This document shows positions 9,101 to 52,400 of a stretch of 64,000 nt of DNA, in pieces. The stretch lies in assembly GCF_001194135.2 (NCBI RefSeq), contig NC_068987.1, positions 74,992,911 to 75,056,910 of the forward strand, given 5' to 3'. The position numbers and the translations under genes were made by a program. This DNA comes from Octopus bimaculoides (Eukaryota). A model generated the notes under the pieces. That model was not told the origin of the DNA. It ran no database searches and was given only the letters and a program-made list of their open reading frames with translations. How positions within the stretch are numbered: the first letter of the stretch is position 1; each line of letters opens with the position of its first letter.

Positions 9101-12100
9101 TAAAAGGAAATTTCTCCAGAATAACCAGCATAGGGAACTCTAGTGACATTCCCATTTGGTTCTCTTGGAGTAGGTGTGGGCTTGAGTTATGTTATTTCTC
9201 AATATAATACAGTCAGAACATAGTGATGGGTAAAATACCGCTAAGCATCATCCAGCATGCTAACAATTCTGCCAGCTCGCCCCCTTAATATTCTCTTACT
9301 TGTTTTAGTCATTTGACTGCGGCCATGCTGGAGCACCACCTTTAGTCGAGCAAATCGACCCCGGGACTTATTCTTTGTAAGCCTAGTACTTATTCTATCG
9401 GTCTCTTTTGCTGAACCGCTAAGTGACGGGGACATAAACACACCAGCATCGGTTGTCAAGCAATGCTAGGGACACACACACACACACACACACACATAAA
9501 TATATATATATATATACATATATACGACGGGCTTCTTTCAGTTTCCGTCTACCAAATCCACTCACAAGGCTTTGGTCGGCCCGAGGCTATAGTAGAAGAC
9601 ACTTGCCCAAGATGCCACACAGTGGCACTGAACCCGGAACCATGTGTTTGGTAAGCAAGCTACTTACCACACAGCCACTCCTGCGCCTATATGATAATAA
9701 TAATTTCTAATAAACTGTGTTTTATTCTTTGTAGATGATGGTTCTGATGTAGAGAACAGTAGCCCTTCTGAAGACAAAGAAATGTTGAAGACTGAGAGTT
9801 TTAAGCTACATAATTCTGATGGCTCCACTCAACAGGACAGTTTGGCTTCAGCATCTTATCTCTCTATCAACAATCAAATGTCTTTTGTTCCCACCAAGTC
9901 GTCCGATCTTACTTGTCTGCCAAATCAACTCGACGTTTTAAATGACACAAAACAGAATCCTAAAGCAGTAAGTGAAATCGATCAACTGGATCAAAATGCC
10001 AAAATAAAAGTCAGTCCAGATTTACCAATGAAGTCATCGATATACTGTTCCATGATGTCTTCATCATTAGATGTGAAATCTGCTGAAAATTCTTCTACAG
10101 ATGTTAGTGATGTTCCTGAGGATGTTGATGTGAATGTGAGCAGCACTGTCTTCAAGGAAGCTGACATTTTCAGTAACAGTCCTATTGAAAATCTGTCTAG
10201 TTCATTACTATCAAGTGACTGTGACACAAGTTTGACAAGCTTCAAAAGATCTCAGAGGATTTCTAGACAGAAATTTGCTCACAGAGAGACAATGCATGTA
10301 CTTGGTATTAGTGATGAAGACTATGTCTCATCTAAAACAAGTAGTTTATCAAATGCTAACATTCCATCTTATAGAACTGATGATGTAGGTACTAACATAT
10401 CTAGTTTCACTGTAAATCAGGAGGAAGTATTGATAAATGGCAATACACAAAACTCAAACACCCTGTCTTCCTTGTTGTCTTGGAAGAGTGTGGGAAGTTT
10501 AGACAATTCTCAAGAGAGTAAAGCTTGGGAGATGGAAATTGAGAAAGAGAAACAAGTCAGAGAGTCACAACAGACATCTTCCTCTTGCTTGGACCAGTCA
10601 GATACCATTATCTCAGATGACCAAACTCTTGGGCCCAGAGTCAAGCGAAGGAAACTTGACTTCCCTACTACTGTGTCTCTGACTACAAGGAACCTTCGAC
10701 CTGTCAAGAAATATTTGGTGATGACCAGTATGTCTACCTCGTAAGTAAACTTTATGTTAATGGTATTGTCCTCATTAGAGGTAGCATGAAACTTTTGGTA
10801 ATTTAAGGGTTTACTAAACTCCACAGTAGCATCTTTCATCTCAGTATTGTCACTCCCTAACTTTAGCAATAGTAGGAACACTATGAATGTTAACACCTCA
10901 ACTATCGTTGCTAACTGACTTGCCATCAGCCATGTACCATTTATATAATCTATCTCACATTTTCGTGTAACAGGTGGTAGATAACCTAAAATTATCGTGG
11001 ACTAGTTTGAAATGAAAACTTTCAGTCTCCCCAAATACAGTTGATACTCACTGATTTTTGTAGCCTGTATTTGACGAAAATATGTATTAACCAGTGGTAC
11101 ATCAACTATTTATTATTATACAAAATAGAGTTGTTTTTTTTTTAATGTATAGTTAATGAAACCCCCTGTTAATGGATGGTACACCTAGTATACCATTTCT
11201 ACGATATTAACATTTCTTTCCAAATTTCATGTTTTTTTTTTTTGTCTAGTAAAGGAATACTTTTCATCTTACGAGGTTTTTAGTTTCATTCAACAACCAA
11301 ATTGCATTTGGGAAGAACCGTCTGGCATTTGCTCTAAATTGCAGCAAAATACACCTGCTTGATAATTAGCATGCATTATAAGTTCTTTGTTTGGAGGAAA
11401 TGACTCTTGTGTATGTGTACCATGTTGGAACATGTCATGCCAGGTGACACTAATATTTAATGTTTTCTTCTCTTCATACATATGGTATGATATACAATTG
11501 CTTCTGACAAGGGACTAAGTTGTCAGATGGAATGAATAATATACATGTTATTGGGTTGTCCAGAAAGTTTGTGCCGATTTATAGTAGCTTACTTTTCGAC
11601 TTATTTGCCATGAAGCCACCTCGATTCTGAGAAGAGGGTATTTTCAAGTTAAAGGAAAGATAGAGACGCATTATGCAACAAAATGGTTCATATTTGGTTG
11701 ATTAAAAATGTAATGGCAAGTATTTATTGACCTTTTTCATTCCTTTAAAACTCGGCACGAACTTTCTGGACAACCCAATAGATACACGTTTTCAAAACGT
11801 GTATGTACCATTCATGCTTGATTACTAATTTGAAGGTTTTGTTCTTTCTTTTCTCAAAGAATCCATTTATAAAATCACATCTGGTGAATACATTGAATCA
11901 AACCAAGGCCAAATTAACATAAAAACCATGCTGACTGTAAAGGGACTTGATGTCAAGTTTATGGCACCTCTTCTGTGCACATCCCTTGCTAATAATGAGC
12001 ACATTAGTATCCATTCTCTTTATAACCCCACTCCCGCAAAAAAATCGACCATGGTCAGAATTTCCAATCGCATTTAATTGTTTGATCAACAAAACTATTA

Positions 12101-36930: not shown

Positions 36931-39900
36931 TCATCGTCGTCGTTGTTTAACATCCGCTTTCCATGCTAGCATGGGTTGGACGATTTGACTAAGGACTGGT
37001 GAAATCAGATGGCTACACCAGGCTCCAATCTGATTTGGCAGAGTTATATGTATGTATATGTATGTATATGTATATGTATATATAACAAGCTTTCAGTCCT
37101 GTCTTCCGAATTCTCTCAAAAGGCATGGTCAATCAGGGCAATAGTAGAATAGTGGAAGACACTTGCCAAAGAACTCATGTAGTTAGATTGAACCTGAAGC
37201 CAGATGGTTGAGAAGCAAAGTTCTTAACTACCCAAGTAAGCCTGTCTTATTAAAAAATAATAAACAGAGAAAATAAACCTTCAGTTTATTTAACAGTTTC
37301 TTTGATTTAACTTGATAAATGTCATGTTATGCTATAATGATATCAATGATTAGATAAGATTAGCAAAGACTTTACACATGGTTTATTGACCAGATGGCAG
37401 CAGCTGGACTAGCCTGTAGTGAAAATCTTATTAAGACAGAGTTAGTTAAATAAAATTAATTATAAATGGTCACACAATTGAAGGGAAGTAACTCAATATG
37501 TTACCATAAATTAATCCTACCTGACGTATGAGATGCTTTACATCAATACGAACAAGGTTCCAAGGCAAAAGATCTCTAGTGTCTGAGTAGAAAGGGCCTT
37601 TTACTGTAGTTGTCACCTGAATAGACTTATCAGTTTGGTTATCCTGAAACATAAGCAAATAGTAAAGTATTCAAATATTGGTTTTAAATTTTGGCACAAG
37701 GCCAGCAAGTTCAGGAGAGTGGGTAAGTTGATTACATCAACCCCAGCACTCAATTGGTTCTTATTTTGTTGACCCTGAAAGAATGAAAGGCAAAGCTGAG
37801 CCTGGTAGAATTTGAACTCAGAACAAAAAGACGGACAAAACACCACTAAGCATTTTGTCTGGCATGTTAATGATTCTGCCAATTTGCTGCCTTGCTATTT
37901 ATGAGACTCTTGGTGTCCATCACCCAAAAGATGGAAAAGTATTCAAATATTGACTGGTACAACATATGTACAACAATACAGATTATGAAGTAGAGAGGAA
38001 TCTCAAATATTAATTTCACATATTTAAATAGTTTCACAAATTTGTCAGACTAGAACAAAGGTAATGGCTGTGTAGTTAAGAAGTATGCTTCTCAACTACC
38101 TAGTTTCAGGTTCAACCCTATTACATGGCACTTTGGCCAATGTTTTTCCACCACAGTCTCATATCAAACAAAATCTGAGTGAAATTTTGCTGAACACAAT
38201 TATATTCAATTAATGAAGTTAATTAGCTGATATTTTATGGTCCAGTGTAGACCACGACTGGTTTTATTAGACTCTACTAGTTTTCCTTTAGTATAGTAAT
38301 ATGTCATTAACTTACTTTGAAGAGTAATTTTTGGTCAGTTATCTTGAAGATGTTTAATGGGTGATTGTCTGATCTGAAAGAAATCTTCAGAAAACCAATG
38401 AGAATATCAGCAGAATTACATGTTGGAATGACTTAGTTAAAGAAATACATCTGGTATAACTATACTAACAAATGTACAGTATTCTGATCTACTTAGCAAT
38501 TCTTTCAGATCTTTTCCATTTGAATTACTATGCTTCGTCTTTAAAAAAAATATTTTTTCCACAGATGTAGTTTTGAATGCTAATTATAAAAATACCATTT
38601 TCTTTTGAGAAATAAATAATACGAAAGTTATGAATAGCTATCTGTGTATTATACTTAATGTAAATACATCATAAAAAGCCGAATCAGACACAGTATTCAT
38701 TCATAAAAAATATATCTTATGGACATACAAGGGCTGTTCATTAAAGATTTCTCCTGATCCACTTCCCAAGGACTGGGATAAAGGAAACGGCATAATTATT
38801 AGTCCTTCTCTACATAGCCACCACCAATGGTGAGACACTTATCCTATCACTTTATGCAGCTGTGAAGACCTCATCAGTAGAAGTCAGTAGGTTGCATCTG
38901 GAGCCAAGACTTTACCTCAGAAATAAGTTCATCATCATCTGAAAAGTGCTTCCCCTTTCAAAAAAGACTTCATGGTTGGAAAGAGGTGGAAGTCAGATGG
39001 TGTGAGGTCAGGAGAGTAAGAGGGATGAAGAAGGATTTCATAGCCGCAGAAGTGTGCTTTCATCTGGGCAACATGTGCATTGTGAACTGGGGCATTTTTT
39101 TGGAGGAGGCAGACTCCTTTGGTCAGCATGTCATGCCCCTCTGCTTTGATGGTGTCCCACAATTTCTGCAGCAAAGAAGCATAATATGCCCCATTAATTG
39201 TGGTACCCTTTGCCAGAAAATTTGTCATCACTACTCCATGCTGGTCCCAAAAGACTGTGAGCATCACCTTACCTGCTGAGGATTGGACATGAGCCTTCTT
39301 TGGAGGTGATGAGTTATGTTTCCATTGCTTCAATTGAACTTTAGTCTCAGGATCATAGTGATGGACCCATGTTTCATCCTGTGTAAAAAGTCCTCCTTGT
39401 TTTCTTGGCACATTGCCAAAAGAGCCTGGGAGCAATTGACTTGTTCTTGCTTCTGAAAAGGTGTGAGCATCTAATGAATCCATCATGCAGACAACTTCTG
39501 CATGTGCACATGGTTGTGAATGATTTTTTTCCATGGACCTTACACTTATCTCCACTTCTTGGGCTAGTTACCAAATAGTTATGTGGCGATCCTCCAAAAT
39601 GGTGGCTTCCACTTTATGGATGGTGTTGTCATCAATGATGAAATGTGATTGTCCAGGAGTAAGAGCAATTTCCACTTATGTCCAACAACATTTGAAATTG
39701 GCGATGCCAGTGCTTGACTATGTTATATGATGGTGTATCGTCACCATAAACTTCTTTTATCTCATTGAAAGTCTCTTTTGCTATACAACTTTTTATGTAT
39801 AAGAACCTGATCACTGATCTGCATTCAACTGCCTCCATTATAATACCTAAGTCCACTTCAGCAGCCATAAAAGACAAATGAATACCAGTGGAAAGCTACG

Positions 39901-42900
39901 ATTTTCAATGTAACATGTAGAGACATGTATGATTATACTTGTGCATGTTCTGTTTTCTGCAATAACCAGAAGTGGGTCAGGGGAAATCTTTAATGAACAC
40001 CCTTTGTATTGTATAAATAATACAAATATATCAGTAGCAGATGAAAATCATCCAGTAGCAGAGATGAGAATGCTAAACACATATTCCTGTCTTATTTGGG
40101 CTTTATCAGTAGCATGTACACATTGGCAGTTGCATGCTAAGACAATTTTTTTTTATCACCATTGATATAGGAAAACTGATTGAAAAATCACTGATGTTGC
40201 AATTAGCTGACTGGCTGAATAAAAATCTGTAATATGCAATTGAAGCAGTATTAGGTTAAAATAGCAATATGTACATCAAATGGATTGCAACAAGCTATAT
40301 AAACTATGGTCTTTGTCCAGGGAGAAAGTTTTAGCCTCCACTATTGTTGTACTAGAAAAAGCAATTGTCATGTTAAAAAAAAGAAGAAATTCAGAATATT
40401 ATGAAACTCTCAAAGATGAAAACATTTAATGAAAGGAAAGCAAAGCATTATAAAACTTTAAGAGAACCTTAAGCACTAACCTTAAACTCTAAATCCTAAT
40501 GTTTTCAACAGTATTAAAAAAAAGTGGGAGTTCCCTATGAGATTGTCAATGCAAAGTAGTTACAATATCTGGTATGTTGATAGTTGAGGCATCTGAATGG
40601 GTAAAATTACCAAAAATTTTAACCGTAAAAGATTCATAACTTCTTTATTATTAATTTCTCCAAGAAATGAATGTCATTTTCATAATAAACATGCAAAACT
40701 ACATATGTGTTGAGATTAAAAAAAAAAAATGAGCACAGTGACTCAAATGTAAAAACTCTATTCTTTCACTTTGGACACTATGCTTGACAAATAAGGTCAG
40801 AACAATGCCTTGAGCTGTCTCCCATACTTCCTAGAAAAAGAAAATGAAAATAAAATATTTGTATTTTAACATTAGCTCCAAGCCACATATTTTTAGTGAG
40901 GGTATAATTAATGATTAAATCAACTTTTGTTCCTGACAGATACTGTATTTCATTGATCCACTCTTGGAAGGACAAAAGCATATTTGATCTCAGAACAAAG
41001 GGCTGAAAGTATATATCAAGCTAGTTTGTCTGACTCTAATAGTTCTGACAAACCCTACCCAAAGAAAATAATAGTAACTATAATTTATAACATTTTTCAT
41101 CTGTATTGCATAATTATTTCTAACTAGCTTTATGAGGCTCCATGCATTAAACACTTATACTAATTTGATCGTTATGGTAAAAACAGTTAAGCAGCTGAAG
41201 AAGTTAAATGAGATGGTTTGGTACAGGAAGGTTTTAATTTCTTTCAACTAATCACATGGCCAATTCTTGTAAGGGTTATTTGACCAGCCAAAAATAGTTT
41301 CTGAGTAATCTGAATTCTGATGGGTTAAATGTTGAAATAACTGTGAAATCTCTATATAACATTGAAAAATAAACAAAAAAATACCTGACTTTCATCAGGA
41401 TGTTCTGTTTGATATGGATTCCACTGGGATTCTGGATAAAATGTCACCATTGCCAAGGAAAGGATCTAAAAATTTAAAATATTCATAGGTTCAGAATTAG
41501 AATGTTTAGCAGAGCTCTATTTGTGTGTATGAGTGACTTATGCAGGATTCAAAAAGTATTTGAGGACACTTAACTATCAGTATATATATATATATATATA
41601 TATATANNNNNNNNNNCAAGTTACAAAGTAGAGCTTTTCTTTTTGGGGAGGAGAAGGAAGAAAAAAAGGGGAGGGTAGATTTTTGATCAAAAGGGATCGT
41701 AAAAAAAAATAGATAGATAGATGGATAGATCGATAGATAAATAGACAGATAGATAGCTAGTATGCTTCGCTGGATGTGCAGTGTCAGTGTGCATGTATGA
41801 CAAAACATCTTGAGAGAAAAGTTGGGCATAAAAGTCATCAGATGTGGTGTGCAAGAGAGACAACTCTGCAGGTCTGGGCATGTGATGTATGTGGACGAGG
41901 ACAGCTGTGTAAAAAAGTGCCAATATCTAACTGTTGAGGGAACCTGAAGAAGAGGTAGAGTCAAGAAGACATGGGATGAGGTGGTGAAGCATGATCTTCA
42001 AACATTGGGCCTCATGGAAGCAATGACAGGTGACAGAGACCTTTGGCAATATGCTGTACATGAGAAGACCTATCAAACCAAGTGAAACTATAATTGTGGC
42101 TGATGCTAGTGTCATGTAATAGGCACCCGTGCTGGTGGCATGTAAGAAGCACCCTTCAAACGTTGGGCCTCATGGAGGCAATTATTAGTGACCAAAACCT
42201 TTGGTGATATGTCATGCTTGAGAAGACTTGTCAAGCCAAGTGAAATCATAGTCGTGGCCAATGCCAGTGTCACATAACTAGCACCTGTGTTGGTGGCACG
42301 TAAAAAAGCGTCCATTATACTCTTGATGTGGTTGGCATTAGGACTGTAGAAACCATGCCAAATCAGATTGGAACCTGGTGCAACGCTCTAGCCAACCAAT
42401 TTCAGTCAAACCAGCTAACCCATGCCACCATGGAAAGCAGATGCTAAATGATGATGATGATGATGATGGTATATATATAAGGTTGTTTGTTATGGCAGGT
42501 CAGAGAGCGACCATTGGTTTTGCACCTATAAAGTGACTCATCAGACTCAAGTAGCTGGAGGGTTATATGCCTCCAGCCTTTTGAGCCTCACAATTCACCT
42601 ATACACTTTATATATATGTGACCAACCATAACAAACAACCTTCTAAATATCCTGCTGCTCTAATGTTCCACTGTGCTTCTTTTTCGAATATATGAACGTG
42701 TGTGTGTGTGTGTTGTTGTTGTTGTTGTTTTATTCTTTCATTTTTTTACTTGTTTCAGGCTGTTTCAAGCTCCAATGACTACTTTGCTATGGTTTCTACA
42801 GTTTGATGCCCTTCCATATGTCTAAATTTATATCTATATCTGAATCAGTCTATCTACATAAAATGTGTGACTTGGAAAGGTAATGTAGTACAGGACAGTT

Positions 42901-43749
42901 GACAAGAATGATGCCAGAGTGTTACCTTTGCAGATGGCTGAAGAATGAATGTTGAAATGCTGAGAGATACCATTATGTTTAGCATGGAATTCAGTTGTTG
43001 TTTTGAGTAAGAGTCAACCAGATTCAAGAAAGACTCATAACCTACAACCAGAAAGAAAATAAACAAAGTGACAAATAGTTATCAAATAAGAATTTCTAAC
43101 TAATGTGCAAGGTTGTAAGTTTTCTAAGGAACAGAGTATAGTTTGGTTGTACAGATCTTTTCTATTCTAGGCACAAGGCCTGAAATTTTGAGGCAGGCAG
43201 GGGCAGTCGATTAGATCGACCCAATATGCAACTGGTACTTAATTTATCGACCCTGAAACGATGAAAGGCAGCAGAATTTGAACTTAGAATGTAAAGACAG
43301 ACGAAATACCGCTAAGCATTTCGCCCGGCATGCTAACATTTCTGCCAGCTCACAGCCTGGTTATACAGATCTTGAAGCGTTACTGGTGCTTATGTTCTAC
43401 AGAAATCACACACAAATACATGCACAAACTAATACACATACACTCAAACATACACTTACACTCATACATGCACTCATACTCACACATGCACTCACACTCA
43501 CATAAAATGCAACATCCGCCATATCAGAGTTATTCGTTTATTCTTTTCCTTATTTCAGTCATTTGACTGTGGCCATGCTGGAGCACTGTCTTAAAGGGTT
43601 TTAATTGAAGAAATCGACTCCAGGATTTATTCTCTGCAAACCTAGTACTTATTCTATCAGTCTTTTTTGCCAAACCACTAAGTTACGGGTACATAAACAC
43701 ACCAACATTGGTTGTCAAGTGATGGTGGGGAACAAACAGAGACACAAAG

Positions 43750-43823
<74 letters not shown>

Positions 43824-46743
43824 ACACACACACACACACACGACATGCTTCTTTCAGTTTCCGTCAACCAAATCCACTCACAAGGCTTCCTTTGGTCTGC
43901 CTGAGGCTATAGTAGAAGACACTCGTCCAGGTGTGATGTGTGTGTGTATTCGTGTGCATGTGTGTGTGTGCACGCGTGCATGCCCACATGCGCATGTGCA
44001 TCAGTGTGTGAATATATCTGTGCTTTTGTGTTTTTCCTCCACCATTGCTTGACAACAGGTGTTGGTGTGTTTATGTCCCTATAGCTTGATTGATGATAAA
44101 GATAAAATAATACCAAAAACAACAACGTCCAGATTTTGTAAATGTTGTCTGCCATAATATTTCCAGTCCACAATGAGGTTACATAAACATGACATACATT
44201 TTGTGGTTGTCTTATGTATCTAGCAAATTTTAATTACTATTGTAGTGGTGGCTAAAAAGCTATGGATATACGCCATAGGAAAGCTTAGTATGGAAAGTGA
44301 AGATTGCTTGCACATCAATAATTTATGTAAATGACTAAGCTAATCCCTGCTACCAGACTAATAAATCCAATTGATATTAAAAAAGCAAAATAAAAACAAA
44401 AACACTAATTAATAATACATAACTAATACATTCCTCTTAATTCTTTCTTTAATGAAGGACTTAGAATAAAATGTTACAATCTTCCGCACAGAACATGACC
44501 TTTCTAAAAGAAAGAGAAAGGAAAAATGTACACTTACCAATATACTGGAATCGAAGGAACTCTGGACTCTTCAGAAGTTTCCAAATATAAATATTATCAA
44601 ATCGATTAACTGTGATTGCCAGATTGTCAAGGAATTTACTCTCAGAGATTTTGTAAATGTTATCTGCCGTAACATTGTCTTGCACCATTGCAATAAATGT
44701 ACTGTTTTTATAGATAGTTGCCAATTCTGTAATAATTTTGCCTGGTGAGGGAAGAAATATTGATTTCTTTGATGTAAGTTGCACACAGTTTGTAATTTAT
44801 AAAGAGATGCAAGAAATGAGACTGTAGCTTTTATAAGTTTCATCTTATATTAAAATTCAAATTACAATGAACGTAAACAAACAAACGAAGTTTGCTTTTA
44901 GAAGCGTTGAGATGTCTTAGAAAGTTAAAGAAGTGATTTTAAATTCTCAATCGCAGGATAATGTTAATAATATAGCCTGAACAGGATAAACTACCCCTAT
45001 TTTGCAGAGAAAAGTGTAGGTGAGGGGTAGTTTATCCTGTTCAGGCTATATTATTAGCATTATCCTGCAATTGAGAATTCATCTTATATTGTTTAATGAC
45101 TATGTTATCTTTAAGAAATATATTTTCATTATCTAGATCAGTGCTCTGTGATCTTTTTTTTACTTGTGGCACATTTATATTCTTTTCAAAATTTGGCGGC
45201 ACACCTAGACTAAAAATATAACTAAAAGTATAGGGAAACAAATTATATTCAGGTAACACTGTGGCACACCTAACATTGTCCTATAGCACATCAGTGTGCT
45301 GCAGCATACTGGTCACAGAGCACTGTTTGAGATGAAAAATTTTCTAGAATGTTATTTGTAATGAGTGGATGACAACAAAACCATGGCAATGGAGGTAAAT
45401 GGTTTCAGATGGGAATTGAAACCTGATGATAAATTTATTTAATTTCACCCGTTGACAAACAAATAATGATGCTAAACAACCAGACACCCATCCAATTTTT
45501 GTACCAGAAATCTTTAATTGATGTTTTCTTTTTCAGTATATTGCAGGAGATTCCAGAAGCATGAATGTCTAATTCAAACAAAGTGAAATTTGAACTTAGA
45601 ACAACAAGTACTGAACTCTACTGAAAAGCAAATCATCTGAACTACAGCGCCATCATTATGCTAAGGATTATCTTTTCAAGGTGTAGGCATGGTTGTGTGG
45701 TAAAACATCTACTTCCTTACAGCATGATTCTAGGTTCAATCCCAGATCCAAATACAGGGTTGATCTAATTGACTGCCCCACCACCGCCTCAAAATTTCAG
45801 GCCTTGTGCCTAGAATAGAAAAGATCTGTACAACCAAACTATACTCTGTTCCTTAGAAAACTTACAACCTTGCACATTAGTTAGAAATTCTTATTTGATA
45901 ACTATTTGTCACTTTGTTTATTTTCTTTCTGGTTGTAGGTTATGAGTCTTTCTTGAATCTGGTTGACTCTTACTCAAAACAACATTCTTCAGCCATCTGC
46001 AAAGGTAACATTCTGGTATTATTCTTGTCAACTGTCCTGTACTACATTACTTTTCCAAGTCACGCATTTTATGTAGATAGACTGATTCAGATATAGATAT
46101 TAATTTAGACATATGGAAGGGCATCAAACTGTAGAAACCATAGCAAAGCAGTCATTGGAGCTTGAAACAGTCTCCTGGTTTGCTAGCACCTGTCAATTCT
46201 TCCAACCCATGCCAGCATGGAAAACAGAACTTAATTTGTGATGATGATATATGTATGTATATGTATTTGCATGTATACATACATATACGATAGAAAGATT
46301 GATAAATAAGTTTATACCTGTAATTATTGGGGCACTGGGATATGTAACATACTGCTCTAAATGCCAATCTTGAGAAATTAGGCTTCTCAAAACCAGAAAG
46401 GCGAAAGCTGATTTGAAGACTACAGATACAAGTCATCACTGGAACTGTAAAAATCTGCAAAACTTTCCAGAAGTTTCAAAATATGTTGAGCCTAGTTTTG
46501 AGAAAGCTATAACAATCCTTTCTCTTCTGGGCGCAAGGCCTGAAATTTGGGGGAGTGGGGCTTGTCGATTTCATCGACCCCAGTGCACAACAGGTATTTA
46601 TTTAATTGACACCAAAAGGATGAAAGGCAAAGTCGACCTTGGTGGAATTTGAACTCAGAATGAAATGCCTCTAAGCATTTTGCCTGGTGTGCTAACGTTT
46701 CTGCCAGGTCACCGCCTTTGAGAAAGCTGTAATAATGATGGCA

Positions 46744-46793
<50 letters not shown>

Positions 46794-49059
46794 AATGATG
46801 ATGATGACGATGATGGTGAAGCATCAGGGGAGGAGGAAGCAGCAAAGGAGAAAAAGGAGAAAGAAGAAGAGGTGGAAAAGGAGATTATTGATGAAGATGC
46901 AAGCAAAATATATATTAAAAAAAAATAAATACCCCCCCCCCCCAAAAAAAAAACCAAAAGTGCAGAGATGCTGTATTCAAGAAGGACTAATGCATCAGCT
47001 AGTGACCTACCTTTTGAGTTGTACTCCATGAAAGAGAAATCTGTTGAAAGTTTGGTTTCTTTGGCAAGTACTTCTGCTGTGGACTTTGGTGGATTTCATG
47101 TGGATTAGAGAAAGGAGAGGATAAAAACATTTTAGAATGTTGTTTTAAACAAGATTAGCTGCCAAAAAATCAAATGGGAAAGAGGGAAATGGAGAATGAG
47201 GGGTAGAGAGAGAGAGAAAGAAAGAGAAAGGGAAGATAGAAGGGGAGAGGGAGCTTATGAGAGTAAGAAATTAGAGGGAGTTAGTAAATGATTAGAAAAG
47301 GTTAGTTGTTATTGTAGATTTGTAGCAATTGTAATTAGAAATAAATTTTGAGATACGCTGTGCTTGAGAATACCTGTTGAGTCAAGTGAAATCGAAATTG
47401 TAGTTACGGCCGATGCCAGTGAGCTTGACTGGCACCTGTTCTGGTGGCATGTAATAAGCACCATTGAAGCATGGGTTAATGCCAGTGCCGCCTAACTGGT
47501 TCCCTGTTCCAGTGACATGTAAAAAGCACCATCTGAATGTGGTCAAGGCCAGGGCCGCCTGACTGGCTCCTGTGTTGGTGGCATGTGAAAAGTACCCACT
47601 ACACTCTCAGACTGGTTGGCATTAGGAAGGGCATCCAGCCATAGAAACCTTGCCAGATCATACTGGAACCTAGTGCAACGCTCTAGCTAACCAATTTCAG
47701 TCAAACCATCTAACCCATGCCACCATTAAGGAGTAGTAACAACTAGGGTAGGGTAGCTGACTGCTTATTGTGATCATTTGTCTTTTGGTCTCCTGTAGCT
47801 TTGCTCTCTTTTACAAACCCAGTGAGCATACATATATTTCCTATTTCAAAGAAATTCGAACAATACATATAAGACCCAAGTTAAAAAGATTCTCAACAAT
47901 TAAACTTCTCTGGTTGACATTAAGACACCCACCCCCAATAGAGGCCTTAACTCCCACATTTTAGAGCTCCATGACCTCCATTTTTCAGGAGCAAAATCCT
48001 TTTAACAGGTTCCATAAGACTGGAATTTTGGAATCTGCAAATAAAGATCAGTAGTATGGGATACATGTGTCATGATTAGAATTTCTTTAGGGAGTGTAAA
48101 GAGGGAAAGAACCCTCATCTGCAATTTTGATGAAATTCGAATCATATGTATTCCAGTTCCTTACAGAAAATATAACAGAAAAGTCTAATTCTTCAATTGC
48201 ATGTAACACGGGCCACGCCGGGTATCTTTGCTAGTATATATACATCATCATCATCATCATCACCGTCGTTTAACGTCCGCTTTCCATGCTAGCATGGGTT
48301 GGACGATTTGACTGAGGACTGGTGAAACCAGATGGCTACACCAGGCTCCAATCTGATCTGGCAGAGTTTCTACAGCTGGATGCCCTTCCTAACGCCAACC
48401 ACTCAGAGAGTGTTGTGGGTGCTTTTACGTGCCACTGACAAGAAGGCCAGTCAGGCGGTACTGGCAACAGCCATACTCAAAATGGTGTATTTTATGTGCC
48501 ACCCGCACAAGAGCCAATCCAGGGGCACTGGCAATGATCTCGCTCGAATATCTTTACACATGCCGCAGGTACAAGTGCCAGAAAGGCAACGCTGGGCACA
48601 GGTGCCATCACAATTTCGCTTTCGCTTGCCCCAATAAGTCTACGCAAGCTGAGTTTCGTGTCCAATGAGGGAGACGACATTGGCATGGGTGCCAGACGTC
48701 AAATTTAACTCGATTTTGATTTCACTTGCCTCAACAGGTCTTCGNNNNNNNNNNNNNNNNNNNNNNNNNNNNNNNNNNNNNNNNNNNNNNNNNNNNNNNN
48801 NNNNNNNNNNNNNNNNNNNNNNNNNNNNNNNNNNNNNNNNNNNNNNNNNNNNNNNNNNNNNNNNNNNNNNNNNNNNNNNNNNNNNNNNNNNNNNNNNNNN
48901 NNNNNNNNNNNNNNNNNNNNNNNNNNNNNNNNNNNNNNNNNNNNNNNNNNNNNNNNNNNNNNNNNNNNNNNNNNNNNNNNNNNNNNNNNNNNNNNNNNNN
49001 NNNNNNNNNNNNNNNNNNNNNNNNNNNNNNNNNNNNNNNNNNNNNNNNNNNNNNNNNNN

Positions 49060-49487: not shown

Positions 49488-52400
49488 TTGTGTGGCTAAA
49501 TTTGTTCTTGATTAGAGAGTTTGCTTTGTTACTCTTTATACAAGGGGTGCATGCATGAGTATTACACATGCATGTGTAACTATTTGTATATGTTCACCCA
49601 GCTATCTCAAATGAAGAATCACTGAAATATTTTGTATGTATGTATACGTGTATGTTAACTTGGAACAGTGGATAGAAAAATGATTTTGTTGAGGTAAAAG
49701 TTACCTTTATATCTGAAAGTTCATTGTAGAAAAGCTTGTTATAATTAATATTTTCTTTATTCCAGGAGCAATAAGTTAACCCTTTGTAGTCCCACTCTAT
49801 ATATGAAGGGCACATATTAGGTTGAACAGAGAGGGACAAATAGTTTTTCAACAGACGTTTCCTGTCAAATAAAATAAAAGCAACATAGTTAAATGTGGTA
49901 AAGAAAATTCTCTCTAGAAATTCCCCTACTAGAACTATGTATTTGGACAATGAAATTTTGAGATTCCATGATCCACATTAGAAATTAAATACCTCAAGGT
50001 ATAATGTGAGAGGTCACAGCTCTGGTACTACTGACATATGATTAGAAAGTCACAGGAAAGAATTGCAAAATGGATACTTCAGGCCAAGCCAACTGGCAGG
50101 TGACCAAAAATAAGTTGATTGGATAATATCCATGGTTTCAGTTGGTCGTGCTTGGGAATCCATTTGAAAAGCTTAATGATGGCTGCTTCTCACAGGACCT
50201 TATTGAGAAGTATATATGCTTCTAATATCCTATTACACACAATTACAATACATCAATGTATTGAGGGCAGTGTCATATGCTCTCCAAGTTCAGTTCCTCT
50301 CTGTGACATGAAAGACTGTTGTAACATGAGTTCCTTACCTTTCATACTCTTTTAAATTCAGTGACAACAAAACAGGCAGTCCTATTCTGTTGCTTGCTTG
50401 GAACTTCTTATCATTCCCAATATGTAGATATGGCAGTGGAAAAATGAGTCGATTGAAAGTGAAAACTGTTTTTGATTGGTTGCAGTAAAAATTAACCTAA
50501 AAAGACAACCAATATGACCACATTTCAATTATTTAGAACATACATCAATTGAAATTGTTGGAAAATATTAATTTTTTCATGAAAAAGGAAAGTAACATGG
50601 GTTGCCCACTTTTCATCCTAATATGAGATGATTTAAATTTTGTCACTTGGATCTACAACAGCTGAAACCAAATTATCCTCAAATCATAAGTATCTTAAAA
50701 GTAAGCTCATTAAATAATGTAGTCTGAGGTACACTATACTCAGGAGAAAAAAATGCGAAATGCGTGAATGATTTTTGGAATAAGTCTGAATGATCAGGAC
50801 TGGCTTAAGGCAAAGCAACTCGAGTAAATTTTAAACAAGGTTTTACTTATAACTATTCCCAAACAGTATGAGAAAAATCTTCATTAATTCATCATGTAAA
50901 TTCTAATATTAATCTCTGATTTTACTACAAGGGACTAAAGAGTGCAGAAGGCTTACTGAATAGGATAGCAGATGTCTAGGTGGATAGGAAACCAGGCAAG
51001 GCACCACCAGTTCAAATCCTGTACTTGGCACATGCTATGCTTGTAGTCAGGACACTAGACTGTGAAATGGCTTCAGTCAACCTAACAAAATATTTCCCAT
51101 GGCCTAGAAACAGTTTGTGTTCAAGGCTAGGATAATAATTCAGAAATGACTCAGTCTACTAAGCTATATATAGTTAGCAAAGGTAGAATGCAAGATAAGA
51201 ACAATTTGTGCCTAAGGCCGAGACACTAATTCATAGGTGGCCCAGTTTACTCAGCTGTAAATAGATTAATGGGTAATGCACATCAGGAACAATTCATTGC
51301 TTGAAGCAGCAAAAGAACCGTTGATTTGACAACTGATTCATTAACTTGCAGAAATGAATTTAACCCTTCTTGTGGAATAGAGAAAAAGCTACTGACCTAA
51401 GATGGTGTAGCACCCTGTCAAGGCCATATATACCTCTCATCCACTTAAAGTAATGAATCTGGTGATTAAGCACCAGGTATGTGAGATTATTGTGACTCAG
51501 AGGGATTAACATTGAGTGACCACATTTTTGTACTGTAGTTTCAAGATTACTGCCTCATTGTTACTTCACACAAAAATATTTGCAGCTCTTTTCAGAATCT
51601 CATCTTCTTACTCAAGTGAGACAAATACATGGAGATGATTATTCATTAGTTTATTAGACCAGATAGTGCATGCATCAACATTAGTCATTATTCAGTACAA
51701 TTTCCATAATTTCTGTTGATATTAAATGACGAACAACAAAAATAAACTGTCAATCAATTATATATGCAAATTGGTATATCAAGCTTCAGCCTGCCCTATG
51801 AAGATAAAGGTAAAACCAAAGTAAAAACAAGCAATCCCTGACTTCTTCCAGACAGAAATTATTTTCCATCTATGAGCAATGTTTCACTTCATAAAATGTT
51901 TAATTTATACCTCTTAGGTTATGTCATGCTGATGATTTCTAAAATGAATGAAATAATACTATGCATGATTTAAGATCTTCATAATAAGAAAGCAGCAAAA
52001 AAAAAACAAAAAACAAAAAACAACCCAAATATGTGTATTCTGTGCATTTTTATCTTATTCATTAATTTTAAATTCAAACTACTTCTAATTCCACCACATA
52101 TTATGAAGAAATGATTATCTTCCTTGTACTAACAGTCAGCAAGGAGACACCATGTGTTTGCAAACAGTTGAAGATGGTACTCACAATGAAACCCCAAAAT
52201 AGCTTGAAACTTTTTTCTATCCATCAATATATTGCACATAAAAATGTGTTTACACTTGTCTATACATAGCATTGTTTTAAAATCTATGGATACATTCTGT
52301 GGTACAGTATAACATTGAAACAATGGAAATATCTGAGAAATTCATTTGACATTTTACAACCCCATTGTTTTTATTATTTATGCTGTCATTGATATTTAGC

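What the first reader, a model, noticed from the sequence alone, without database searches (positions are those of the whole stretch)
42760..46170. Inverted intronic copy of a coding exon: built-in ~385-bp dsRNA over the exon and both its splice sites
Seen: 45786-46170 is an antisense copy of 42760-43194, which contains exon 42926-43041 of gene 2 with its acceptor and donor. In the pre-mRNA the arms could pair, loop out exon 44538-44741 and leave only 50 exon nt bulged. Most of the duplicated sequence is unique, not a dispersed repeat. Established: coleoid cephalopods recode mRNAs extensively by ADAR editing, which needs such exon-complementary dsRNA. Inference: an editing-complementary sequence or splicing switch created by local inverted duplication.
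Basis: partly seen in the sequence, partly recalled or inferred. Interest (0 to 1): 0.75.

Follow-up and report, generated by a model that had tools for sequence, protein, structure and literature searches.

The report
Young inverted intronic copy of exon
An octopus gene carries, in an upstream intron, a recent backwards copy of one of its own conserved coding exons; the pre-mRNA could fold into a ~380-bp double strand over that exon and both its splice sites, but nothing yet shows this is more than a young, unselected duplication.

Summary
Window 45786-46173 is an inverted copy of 42757-43194. One half is 199 nt at 100% identity, the other 191 nt at 96%, and 50 nt are present only in arm A. 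Arm A holds a genuine, conserved 116-nt coding exon (43041..42926, minus strand) with both splice sites. The gene is an uncharacterised conserved protein, the orthologue of LOC115214405. Arm B lies two introns upstream, so the arms also flank exon 44741..44538. Predicted folding gives 379 arm-to-arm base pairs, with both splice sites paired and a 50-nt bulge.

The copy ran from A to B. Arm B carries the target-site duplication and the first 40 nt of arm A's SINE, then runs into a different, resident SINE. Its other end runs into a resident dispersed repeat. This fits repeat-anchored templated repair or template switching, followed by gene conversion of one half.

The copy looks young: arm divergence is about 4%, against about 10% between this genome and O. 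vulgaris. Argonauta hians has no such copy. The O. vulgaris site could not be reached.

A near-perfect 380-bp duplex is what ADAR edits promiscuously, and what promotes circular RNAs or blocks splice sites. It is not the short, imperfect, conserved kind of editing-complementary sequence. Function is untested. The 100% half could be a gap-filling artefact.

The parts
42757..43194 (-). Arm A, the original copy: 153 nt of upstream intron, the 116-nt coding exon, and 169 nt of downstream intron (in gene sense).
   Evidence: Polarity A to B from the SINE target-site duplication.
42926..43041 (-). Conserved coding exon (116 nt, enters in phase 1 and ends in phase 0), encoding (G)YESFLNLVDSYSKQQLNSMLNIMVSLSISTFILQPSAK. 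Skipping it shifts the frame.
   Evidence: Splice sites and frame. HMMER hits span it. Same exon in Argonauta hians, L004 19662-19787.
42948..42997 (-). 50 exon nucleotides present only in arm A. They are deleted in arm B with a 2-nt TG microhomology and form the bulge in the predicted duplex. This stretch also marks the boundary between the 96% and 100% halves.
42757..42815 (-). 59-nt fragment of an abundant dispersed repeat (here called R2; its copies end ...CCAACCCATGCCAGCATGGAAA...(GAT)n), at the outer end of arm A.
   Evidence: At least 13 other copies in the window.
42816..43154 (-). Unique core of the duplicated segment. Its only other copy in the window is in arm B, and there is none in the O. 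vulgaris or A. hians loci apart from the orthologous exon itself.
43155..43358 (+). SINE-like dispersed repeat inserted next to arm A's core, flanked by the target-site duplication GGTTGTACAG (43145-43154) / GGTTATACAG (43359-43368). Only its first 40 nt belong to the arm.
45786..46173 (-). Arm B, the antisense copy, lying in the intron between exon ..47011 and exon 44741..44538. It lacks the 50 nt.
45675..45785 (-). Remainder of a different, degenerate SINE resident at the B site. Arm B's A-derived tract merges into it in register.
   Evidence: Alignment A2; BLAST hits cross the junction.
46174..46250 (+). Continuation of the R2 repeat beyond arm B's outer end, in register with other R2 copies and running to its (GAT)n tail.
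   Evidence: About 20 R2 copies align 46115-46250 without a break at 46173.
44538..44741 (-). 204-nt coding exon lying between the arms. It would be looped out by the duplex and is the candidate for back-splicing.
47011..47086 (-). Upstream coding exon (3' part mapped). Its donor leaves 1 nt, matching the phase of exon 44741.
41385..41465 (-). Next downstream coding exon (ILSLAMVTFYPES...), phase 0.

Best explanation
This is a real but young, lineage-specific inverted duplication inside a conserved gene.

Origin. A 438-nt piece of the gene was copied backwards into the intron two introns upstream. The piece comprised a 116-nt coding exon, its two splice sites and 150-170 nt of each flanking intron. 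The copying was anchored in dispersed repeats that already lay at the recipient site in the matching orientation, a SINE at one end and an R2-type repeat at the other. This fits ectopic gene conversion or synthesis-dependent strand annealing after a break, or replication template switching. The copy later lost 50 nt. The half on one side of that deletion has since been re-homogenised by gene conversion between the arms.

RNA consequences (inferred). Arm B is transcribed first. In those transcripts where its intron has not been removed before arm A appears about 2.6 kb later, the arms zip into a ~380-bp near-perfect duplex. Such a duplex is a substrate for promiscuous ADAR hyper-editing: 18 exon adenosines lie in the duplex, and 13 would recode if edited. 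It also buries the acceptor and donor of exon 43041..42926, which favours frame-shifting skipping. And it brings together the splice sites of exon 44741..44538, which favours a 204-nt circular RNA.

Net effect expected: a modest loss or scrambling of productive mRNA. This would be a neutral or slightly harmful by-product, not an evolved site-selective editing guide.

Shown: the repeat, the exon, the polarity of copying, the repeat-embedded junctions, the uneven divergence, and the predicted duplex. Inferred: every RNA-level consequence.
For: Repeat and duplex.

The exon is real and old.
- HMMER finds 17 homologues across both exons, including Argonauta hians (64% identity), gastropods, an annelid and sea urchins.
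- At least 19 exons of the gene map to the window's minus strand.

Polarity A to B.
- Arm A's SINE has a 10-nt target-site duplication in situ.
- Arm B carries the left copy of that duplication plus exactly the first 40 nt of that SINE.
- Arm B then continues as a different SINE with its own 3' end and no matching duplication.
- R2 runs unbroken through arm B's other end.

Two-step history: 8 mismatches in 191 nt against 0 in 199 nt (Fisher p = 0.003), with the switch at the 50-nt indel.

Youth: arm divergence of 4% or less, against 85-92% identity of the same gene's introns with O. vulgaris. No second copy of the exon in the whole A. hians gene.

Expected behaviour of such duplexes: hyper-editing clusters come from long dsRNA (PMC9989829). 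Inverted repeats of 30-40 nt in flanking introns are enough for circularisation, and ADAR antagonises it (PMC5733622).
Against: - No RNA evidence of any kind could be obtained.
- The gene's expression pattern is unknown.
- Co-transcriptional removal of the arm B intron could prevent pairing altogether.
- The window is a gap-rich scaffold (12 N runs). The perfectly identical half is bounded by an indel on one side and a repeat on the other, which is also what mis-recruited reads in gap filling would produce.
- Youth is estimated from arm divergence, and gene conversion can reset that.
- The closest relative available (O. vulgaris) could not be examined at this site, so conservation within Octopus is untested.
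- The R2-side junction could equally reflect later loss of R2 sequence from arm A.
Confidence: 0.55

Rival explanations
1. Evolved editing-complementary sequence or splicing switch. On this view arm B is kept by selection because pairing with the exon directs useful ADAR recoding or regulated exon choice.
For: Complementarity to the exon and both splice sites is real and extensive. 13 of the 18 duplexed exon adenosines would recode. The 199-nt perfectly identical half could reflect selection for pairing. Five of the 8 mismatches place an A on the arm B strand opposite a C; from my own knowledge, this is a context ADAR edits well.
Against: - The duplex is near-perfect and about 380 bp, which gives promiscuous rather than selective editing (PMC9989829).
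- ECSs as described are conserved with their sites (PMC5705066), whereas this element is absent in A. hians and looks younger than the split from O. vulgaris.
- The junctions lie inside resident repeats, as expected of accidental repair.
- Identity between nearby inverted arms is maintained by gene conversion without selection (general knowledge).
- All mismatches lie in intron, none in exon.
Confidence: 0.1
2. Partial or complete assembly artefact. The 45786-45984 half of arm B, or all of arm B, would have been built from reads of arm A during gap closing of a short-read scaffold.
For: - The window has 12 N runs.
- The identical tract is exactly bounded by a 50-nt indel on one side and by a switch inside a SINE on the other, both places where an assembler can jump.
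- 0/199 against 8/191 mismatches is abrupt.
Against: - There is no N run between 41617 and 48744.
- The 96% half differs from arm A at 8 positions (about 4%). From recall, that is far above what I remember as allelic variation in octopus, which was not checked here. So at least a 191-nt inverted copy, carrying the donor site and 22 exon nt, is a distinct genomic sequence.
- Its flanks are unique-plus-repeat sequence continuous with the surrounding intron.
- Gene conversion explains the same pattern biologically.
Confidence: 0.2
3. Inert at the RNA level. The duplication is real, but the arm B intron is spliced out, or the region is too weakly expressed, so the arms never meet. On this view the only effect is on DNA, as a substrate for inversion of the 2.6-kb spacer.
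For: Arm B is transcribed 2.6 kb before arm A begins. The acceptor that allows its intron to be removed appears about 1.3 kb before arm A begins (coordinates). Many other inverted transposon pairs sit in this gene's introns, apparently tolerated.
Against: -667 kcal/mol of pairing over 379 bp dominates the fold of the whole region. From my own knowledge, splicing commonly lags transcription by more than the 30-60 s needed to transcribe that stretch.
Confidence: 0.15

Closest known systems
Editing-complementary sequences (ECS) of site-selectively edited exons (e.g. GluA2 Q/R and R/G, insect Syt1; review PMC5705066)
   Same: An intronic sequence complementary to a coding exon, able to make that exon double-stranded in the pre-mRNA before splicing.
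   Different: ECSs are conserved with the edited site (PMC5705066); from my own knowledge, they are also short (tens of nt) and imperfect. This element is about 380 bp and 98-100% paired. It covers both splice sites, lies two introns away, is evolutionarily young, and has no demonstrated edited site.
Inverted Alu (IRAlu) pairs and other transposon inverted repeats that form long hyper-edited dsRNA in pre-mRNAs
   Same: Two inverted copies within a few kb of one transcript, forming a long duplex. Expected outcome is promiscuous clustered A-to-I editing.
   Different: The arms here are 77% unique gene sequence, including a functional exon, rather than two independent transposon insertions. Identity is much higher than for the transposon pairs in the same window (68-96%; only short pairs of 130 nt or less exceed 91%).
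Intronic complementary sequences that drive exon circularisation (mouse Sry inverted repeats; Alu pairs flanking circRNA exons; PMC5733622)
   Same: Complementary sequences in the introns on both sides of an exon (here 44741..44538), well above the 30-40 nt that suffice. ADAR is expected to antagonise the pairing.
   Different: The downstream arm extends through the next exon and its splice sites, so pairing would also block linear splicing. No back-splice evidence exists here. Very stable pairing can also inhibit circularisation (PMC5733622).
Hairpin-RNA / endo-siRNA loci made of inverted duplicates of gene fragments (Drosophila hpRNAs, mouse oocyte pseudogene hairpins; from my own knowledge)
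   Same: An inverted duplicate of a piece of a protein-coding gene, giving long perfect dsRNA that matches the parent gene.
   Different: Those are separate loci that act in trans through Dicer. Here one arm is the working exon itself, within the same transcript. Small RNAs are untested.

Membership tests
Editing-complementary sequence (site-selective A-to-I recoding) | Sequence in the same pre-mRNA complementary to the exon around the edited adenosine | tested here: met
   66 of 116 exon nt, plus both flanking intron stretches, pair with arm B.
Editing-complementary sequence (site-selective A-to-I recoding) | Documented A-to-I editing of the paired exon | not testable with these tools
   No RNA-seq or transcript contigs of this species were reachable.
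Editing-complementary sequence (site-selective A-to-I recoding) | Conservation of the complementary element together with the exon across related species | tested here: not met
   The A. hians gene (L004) has the exon but no inverted copy. The O. vulgaris site is unreachable behind more than 27 kb of transposons. Arm divergence indicates an origin after the split from O. vulgaris.
Editing-complementary sequence (site-selective A-to-I recoding) | Short, imperfect duplex whose mismatches and bulges confer site selectivity | tested here: not met
   379 bp; the exon part is perfectly paired apart from one 50-nt bulge.
Long inverted-repeat dsRNA (hyper-editing substrate, IRAlu-like) | Two inverted copies within one transcription unit, a few kb apart, forming more than 100 bp of near-perfect duplex | tested here: met
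   Both arms lie inside one gene, 2591 nt apart, with 379 pairs.
Long inverted-repeat dsRNA (hyper-editing substrate, IRAlu-like) | Arms are independent insertions of a dispersed element | tested here: not met
   339 of 438 nt are unique. The arms are a segmental copy of each other.
Long inverted-repeat dsRNA (hyper-editing substrate, IRAlu-like) | Clustered A-to-G mismatches in RNA | not testable with these tools
   No RNA data.
Intron-pairing-driven circRNA locus | Reverse-complementary sequences of at least 30-40 nt in the introns on both sides of the circularised exon | tested here: met
   Arm B lies 1045 nt upstream of the acceptor at 44741. Arm A begins 1344 nt downstream of the donor at 44538, and its first 153 nt are intronic.
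Intron-pairing-driven circRNA locus | Back-splice junction reads (44538 joined to 44741) | not testable with these tools
   No RNA data.
Repeat-anchored ectopic gene conversion / template-switch duplication | Copied tract ends inside homologous sequence already present at the recipient site | tested here: met
   The SINE-side junction lies 40 nt into a SINE, after which arm B follows a different SINE copy. The R2-side junction is in register with a continuous R2 copy.
Repeat-anchored ectopic gene conversion / template-switch duplication | Donor identifiable by features that could only arise in situ | tested here: met
   The target-site duplication flanks the SINE only at A. B has the left copy but no right copy. 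The exon is functional and conserved only at A.

The most novel reading that the evidence does not exclude
A newborn exon-complementary sequence caught soon after birth. In this species arm B would make a conserved exon double-stranded, producing species-specific recoding of up to 13 codons and/or an autoregulatory choice between linear mRNA, exon skipping and a 204-nt circular RNA. The pairing would be kept intact by gene conversion between the arms. This would be a direct example of how editing-complementary sequences can originate by local inverted duplication.
Probability: 0.15. Interest if true: 0.7.

Novelty: new variant of a known kind. Interest (0 to 1): 0.4.

Why it matters
As far as I know, how exon-complementary sequences that guide ADAR arise is still not settled. 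An inverted duplicate of a working exon, sitting in its own gene in an animal with very active ADARs, is a natural experiment. One RNA-seq versus DNA comparison would show whether a newly made exon duplex is immediately edited, and whether it disturbs splicing or makes a circular RNA.

If it does nothing, or only causes diffuse hyper-editing, that supports the view that most such structures are non-adaptive by-products.

At the DNA level the arms are also a substrate for inversion of the 2.6-kb spacer. Such an inversion would flip a coding exon and inactivate a conserved gene.

Tried and rejected
1. Word-indexed protein search with the joined 106-aa peptide found nothing, and Pfam found nothing. 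This briefly suggested the exons were not real. The exhaustive HMMER search overturned that.

2. Direct in-frame splicing from exon 50496..50338 to exon 44741 fails. Two intermediate exons, 49869..49750 and 47086..47011, explain this.

3. Cross-species check in O. vulgaris.
- The syntenic locus L001 was fetched.
- Collinearity runs from window 63.6 kb down to 46474 and then stops, 300 nt short of arm B.
- The next 27.5 kb of O. vulgaris are LINE and Helitron-like sequence.
- The remaining exons are not in the locus.
- A third protein search with the C-terminal exons, meant to find an O. vulgaris model further downstream, returned only homologues at 33-67% identity, nearly all from metagenome and read-archive collections.

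4. Exact look-ups of window ORFs, to find independent assemblies or transcripts, found nothing in the collection.

5. 'Both arms are copies of a low-copy transposon and the exon is exonised.' Rejected: the exon's protein sequence is conserved in gastropods, an annelid and echinoderms, and the core has no further copy in 167 kb examined.

6. Retro-copy origin. Rejected: the copy contains intron on both sides and has no poly(A).

7. Simple inverted duplication followed by decay. Rejected at the SINE end: identity falls from 100% to about 70-80% within the repeat, and arm B follows a SINE with a different structure.

8. Rfam and tRNA scans of 41-48 kb gave only sub-threshold microsatellite-type hits.

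9. Naming the gene family through Pfam, NCBIfam and PDB gave no match.


Full report
**1. The observation**

The repeat finder on 41500-47500 reports two adjoining inverted pairs.
- 42996-43194 with 45786-45984: 199 nt, 100% complementary.
- 42757-42947 with 45983-46173: 191 nt, 96% complementary.

Pairwise alignment (A1) shows a single inverted repeat. Arm A is 42757-43194 (438 nt) and arm B is 45786-46173 (388 nt). The only gap is a 50-nt stretch of arm A (about 42948-42997) that arm B lacks. Its junction has a 2-nt TG microhomology. The BLAST E-value within the window is 6e-171. A self-comparison of the whole window for inverted pairs shows this is the longest and much the most identical. 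All the others are transposon pairs at 68-96% identity, and none longer than 130 nt exceeds 91%. No N run lies between 41617 and 48744, although the window as a whole has 12 N runs.

**2. The exon is real**

Splice sites and frame:
- On the minus strand, 44741..44538 (204 nt) and 43041..42926 (116 nt) have canonical acceptor and donor sites.
- Their frames join into an open 106-aa peptide.

First searches were negative. The word-indexed protein search and Pfam found nothing.

The exhaustive HMMER search of 1.84 billion representatives found 17 proteins. Most aligned over residues 1-106, across the exon junction.
- The best (P0003, 64% identity) is 'uncharacterized protein LOC115214405, partial' of Argonauta hians.
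- The others are uncharacterised proteins of Gigantopelta, Patella, Haliotis, the annelid Owenia and sea urchins.

Mapping of the gene:
- tblastn of P0003 maps at least 19 exons of this gene to the window's minus strand, from 63316 down to 31117. The two exons have the same boundaries as in A. hians.
- The neighbouring exons are ..47011 (its donor leaves 1 nt, as exon 44741 requires) and 41465..41385 (phase 0, as exon 42926 requires).

The family has no Pfam, NCBIfam or PDB match.

Anatomy in gene sense:
1. exon ..47011
2. intron of 2269 nt containing arm B
3. exon 44741..44538
4. intron of 1496 nt, whose last 153 nt begin arm A
5. exon 43041..42926, inside arm A
6. intron whose first 169 nt end arm A
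7. exon 41465..41385

**3. What the arms are made of**

BLAST of each arm against the window gives three parts.
- 42757-42815 is a fragment of an abundant dispersed repeat, here called R2. Its copies end in ...CCAACCCATGCCAGCATGGAAA... and a (GAT)n tail.
- 42816-43154 has no copy other than arm B.
- 43155-43358 is a SINE-like repeat with many copies.

**4. Direction and mechanism of copying**

SINE end:
- Arm A's SINE is flanked by GGTTGTACAG (43145-43154) and GGTTATACAG (43359-43368). This is a target-site duplication, which shows the SINE inserted where it now lies.
- Arm B contains the left copy of that duplication and exactly the first 40 nt of that SINE, all at 100% identity.
- Arm B then continues as SINE-homologous sequence that differs from arm A's. 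About 20 of the next 29 positions match, two CpGs have decayed, there are internal deletions, and it has its own 3' end ...ACACCTTGAAAAG. No right-hand duplication follows (alignment A2).

R2 end:
- About twenty R2 copies align to 46115-46250 with no break at the arm boundary 46173.
- Arm A's R2 fragment stops at 42757 against unrelated T-rich sequence.

Inference. Arm A is the donor. The copied tract ends inside repeats already resident at the recipient site in the matching orientation. This fits repair of a break, or a replication template switch, that used the SINE and R2 copies as homology anchors and copied the unique exon-bearing core between them. Later loss of R2 sequence from arm A would also explain the R2 side.

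**5. Two ages**

All 8 mismatches lie in 42757-42947 and none in 42996-43194 (Fisher p = 0.003). The switch coincides with the 50-nt indel. I read this as an older duplication, followed by recent gene conversion of one half that stopped at the heterology.

The same pattern would arise if a gap closer had filled arm B's inner half with reads from arm A, joining at the SINE. I cannot separate these two readings without reads.

The 96% half differs from arm A by about 4%. So at least a 191-nt inverted copy, carrying the donor site and 22 exon nt, is a distinct genomic sequence.

**6. Age and conservation**

Octopus vulgaris:
- Introns of this gene are 85-92% identical to the O. vulgaris chromosome (OX597820.1). 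The arms differ by 0-4%. So the duplication is younger than the species split, unless conversion has reset the clock.
- O. vulgaris itself could not be examined at this site. Collinearity runs from window 63.6 kb to 46474 and then ends, 300 nt short of arm B.
- The following 27.5 kb in O. vulgaris encode LINE endonuclease and reverse transcriptase and a Pif1-type helicase.
- The gene's later exons are not in the fetched locus.

Argonauta hians:
- The entire A. hians gene (18.8 kb; assembly identified through PMC12682272 and PMC13652810) has the orthologous exon.
- It has no second, inverted copy of that exon.

**7. Predicted RNA behaviour**

Folding:
- Cofolding the two arms as the minus-strand transcript gives 379 intermolecular pairs and -667 kcal/mol.
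- The minimum-energy fold of the 3651-nt stretch 46300..42650 retains all 379 pairs.
- The acceptor AG (43043-43042) and donor GU (42925-42924) are paired, and 42947-42996 is bulged.

Adenosines and mismatches:
- The exon has 35 adenosines. 18 are in the duplex, and 13 of those would change the amino acid if read as G.
- All mismatches are intronic. Five are C (arm A) opposite A (arm B).

Everything beyond this is inference from established behaviour.
- Long near-perfect dsRNA is hyper-edited promiscuously, and coding sites inside such clusters are generally regarded as by-products (PMC9989829).
- Inverted repeats in flanking introns promote back-splicing, ADAR counteracts this, and very stable pairing can even inhibit it (PMC5733622).
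- Burying both splice sites should favour skipping of the 116-nt exon, which shifts the frame.
- Whether the arms meet depends on whether the arm B intron survives the roughly 1.3-3 kb of further transcription.

**8. Comparison with known systems**

The element works like an ECS in that it is intronic and exon-complementary. It fails two defining features of that family, conservation and a short imperfect duplex. The central feature, actual editing, could not be tested.

It meets the structural definition of a long inverted-repeat dsRNA and of a circRNA-promoting intron pair. It differs from both in that the arms are a segmental copy of unique gene sequence that includes a working exon.

It resembles hairpin-RNA loci in origin, being an inverted duplicate of a gene fragment, but it is intragenic.

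**9. Verdict**

The functional interpretation is only a possibility.

My best reading, at about 0.55, is a young, repeat-anchored inverted duplication with likely but unproven RNA side-effects. Partial assembly artefact stands at about 0.2, RNA-level inertness at about 0.15, and an adapted ECS or splicing switch at about 0.1.

Interest is moderate. It is a clean, cheaply testable case for how exon-complementary sequences might be born, but nothing here shows that it is functional or selected.

Noticed in passing
window 44942-45079 (within 44915-45106): A second local palindrome lies in the same intron, about 200 nt upstream of the acceptor of exon 44741. It is a near-perfect hairpin with a ~58-bp stem (RNA fold -93.9 kcal/mol, z = -18.8). 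It is single-copy in the window and absent from the O. vulgaris and A. hians loci. It could be a foldback element or another template-switch product.
   Followed up: partly
window 44131-44161 vs 44646-44676: A 31-nt direct copy (28/31 identical) of a piece of coding exon 44741..44538 lies in the downstream intron. Together with the two inverted repeats, this suggests the 3.4-kb stretch is prone to small local duplications.
   Followed up: partly
window 42879-42919 / 46011-46051: Four of the 8 arm mismatches (five counting 42759 at the arm end) are the same change on the same strand: G in arm A where arm B's equivalent position has A. They cluster within 41 nt and are not at CpG. By my own rough estimate, about 5% of random outcomes would be this one-sided. 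This might be a strand-coordinated mutation cluster from the repair event, or chance.
   Followed up: partly
L001 37068-64578 (O. vulgaris OX597820.1) vs window 46474: The orthologous O. vulgaris intron holds more than 27 kb of transposon sequence (LINE EN/RT ORFs, Pif1-type helicase). The annotated O. vulgaris protein P0002 (400 aa, 'hypothetical') stops after the exon matching window 50496-50338 and adds a terminal exon 20 kb away inside that block. The gene model therefore looks truncated.
   Followed up: partly
window 38935-39555 (-): A mariner-type transposase ORF (Pfam Transposase_1, E = 5e-20) sits inside an intron of the same gene.
   Followed up: no
window 38387-31117 (-), C-terminal exons of the gene: The C-terminal ~220 aa (DHHF...DGHSRKY...LPLYEDMAPWNIVF...YIDYD...) have 78 homologues at 33-67% identity, nearly all in metagenome and read-archive protein sets. 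All but one carry no Pfam domain, and none has an informative name. There is also no NCBIfam or PDB match. This is a widespread domain that is still undescribed.
   Followed up: partly
window 41996-42148 vs 42154-42306: A tandem duplication (153 nt, 77% identity) of the R2-type dispersed repeat lies just downstream of arm A in the same intron.
   Followed up: no
window 9782-10744 (+): A 320-aa serine-rich ORF on the opposite strand has no Pfam match and was not placed in any gene.
   Followed up: no
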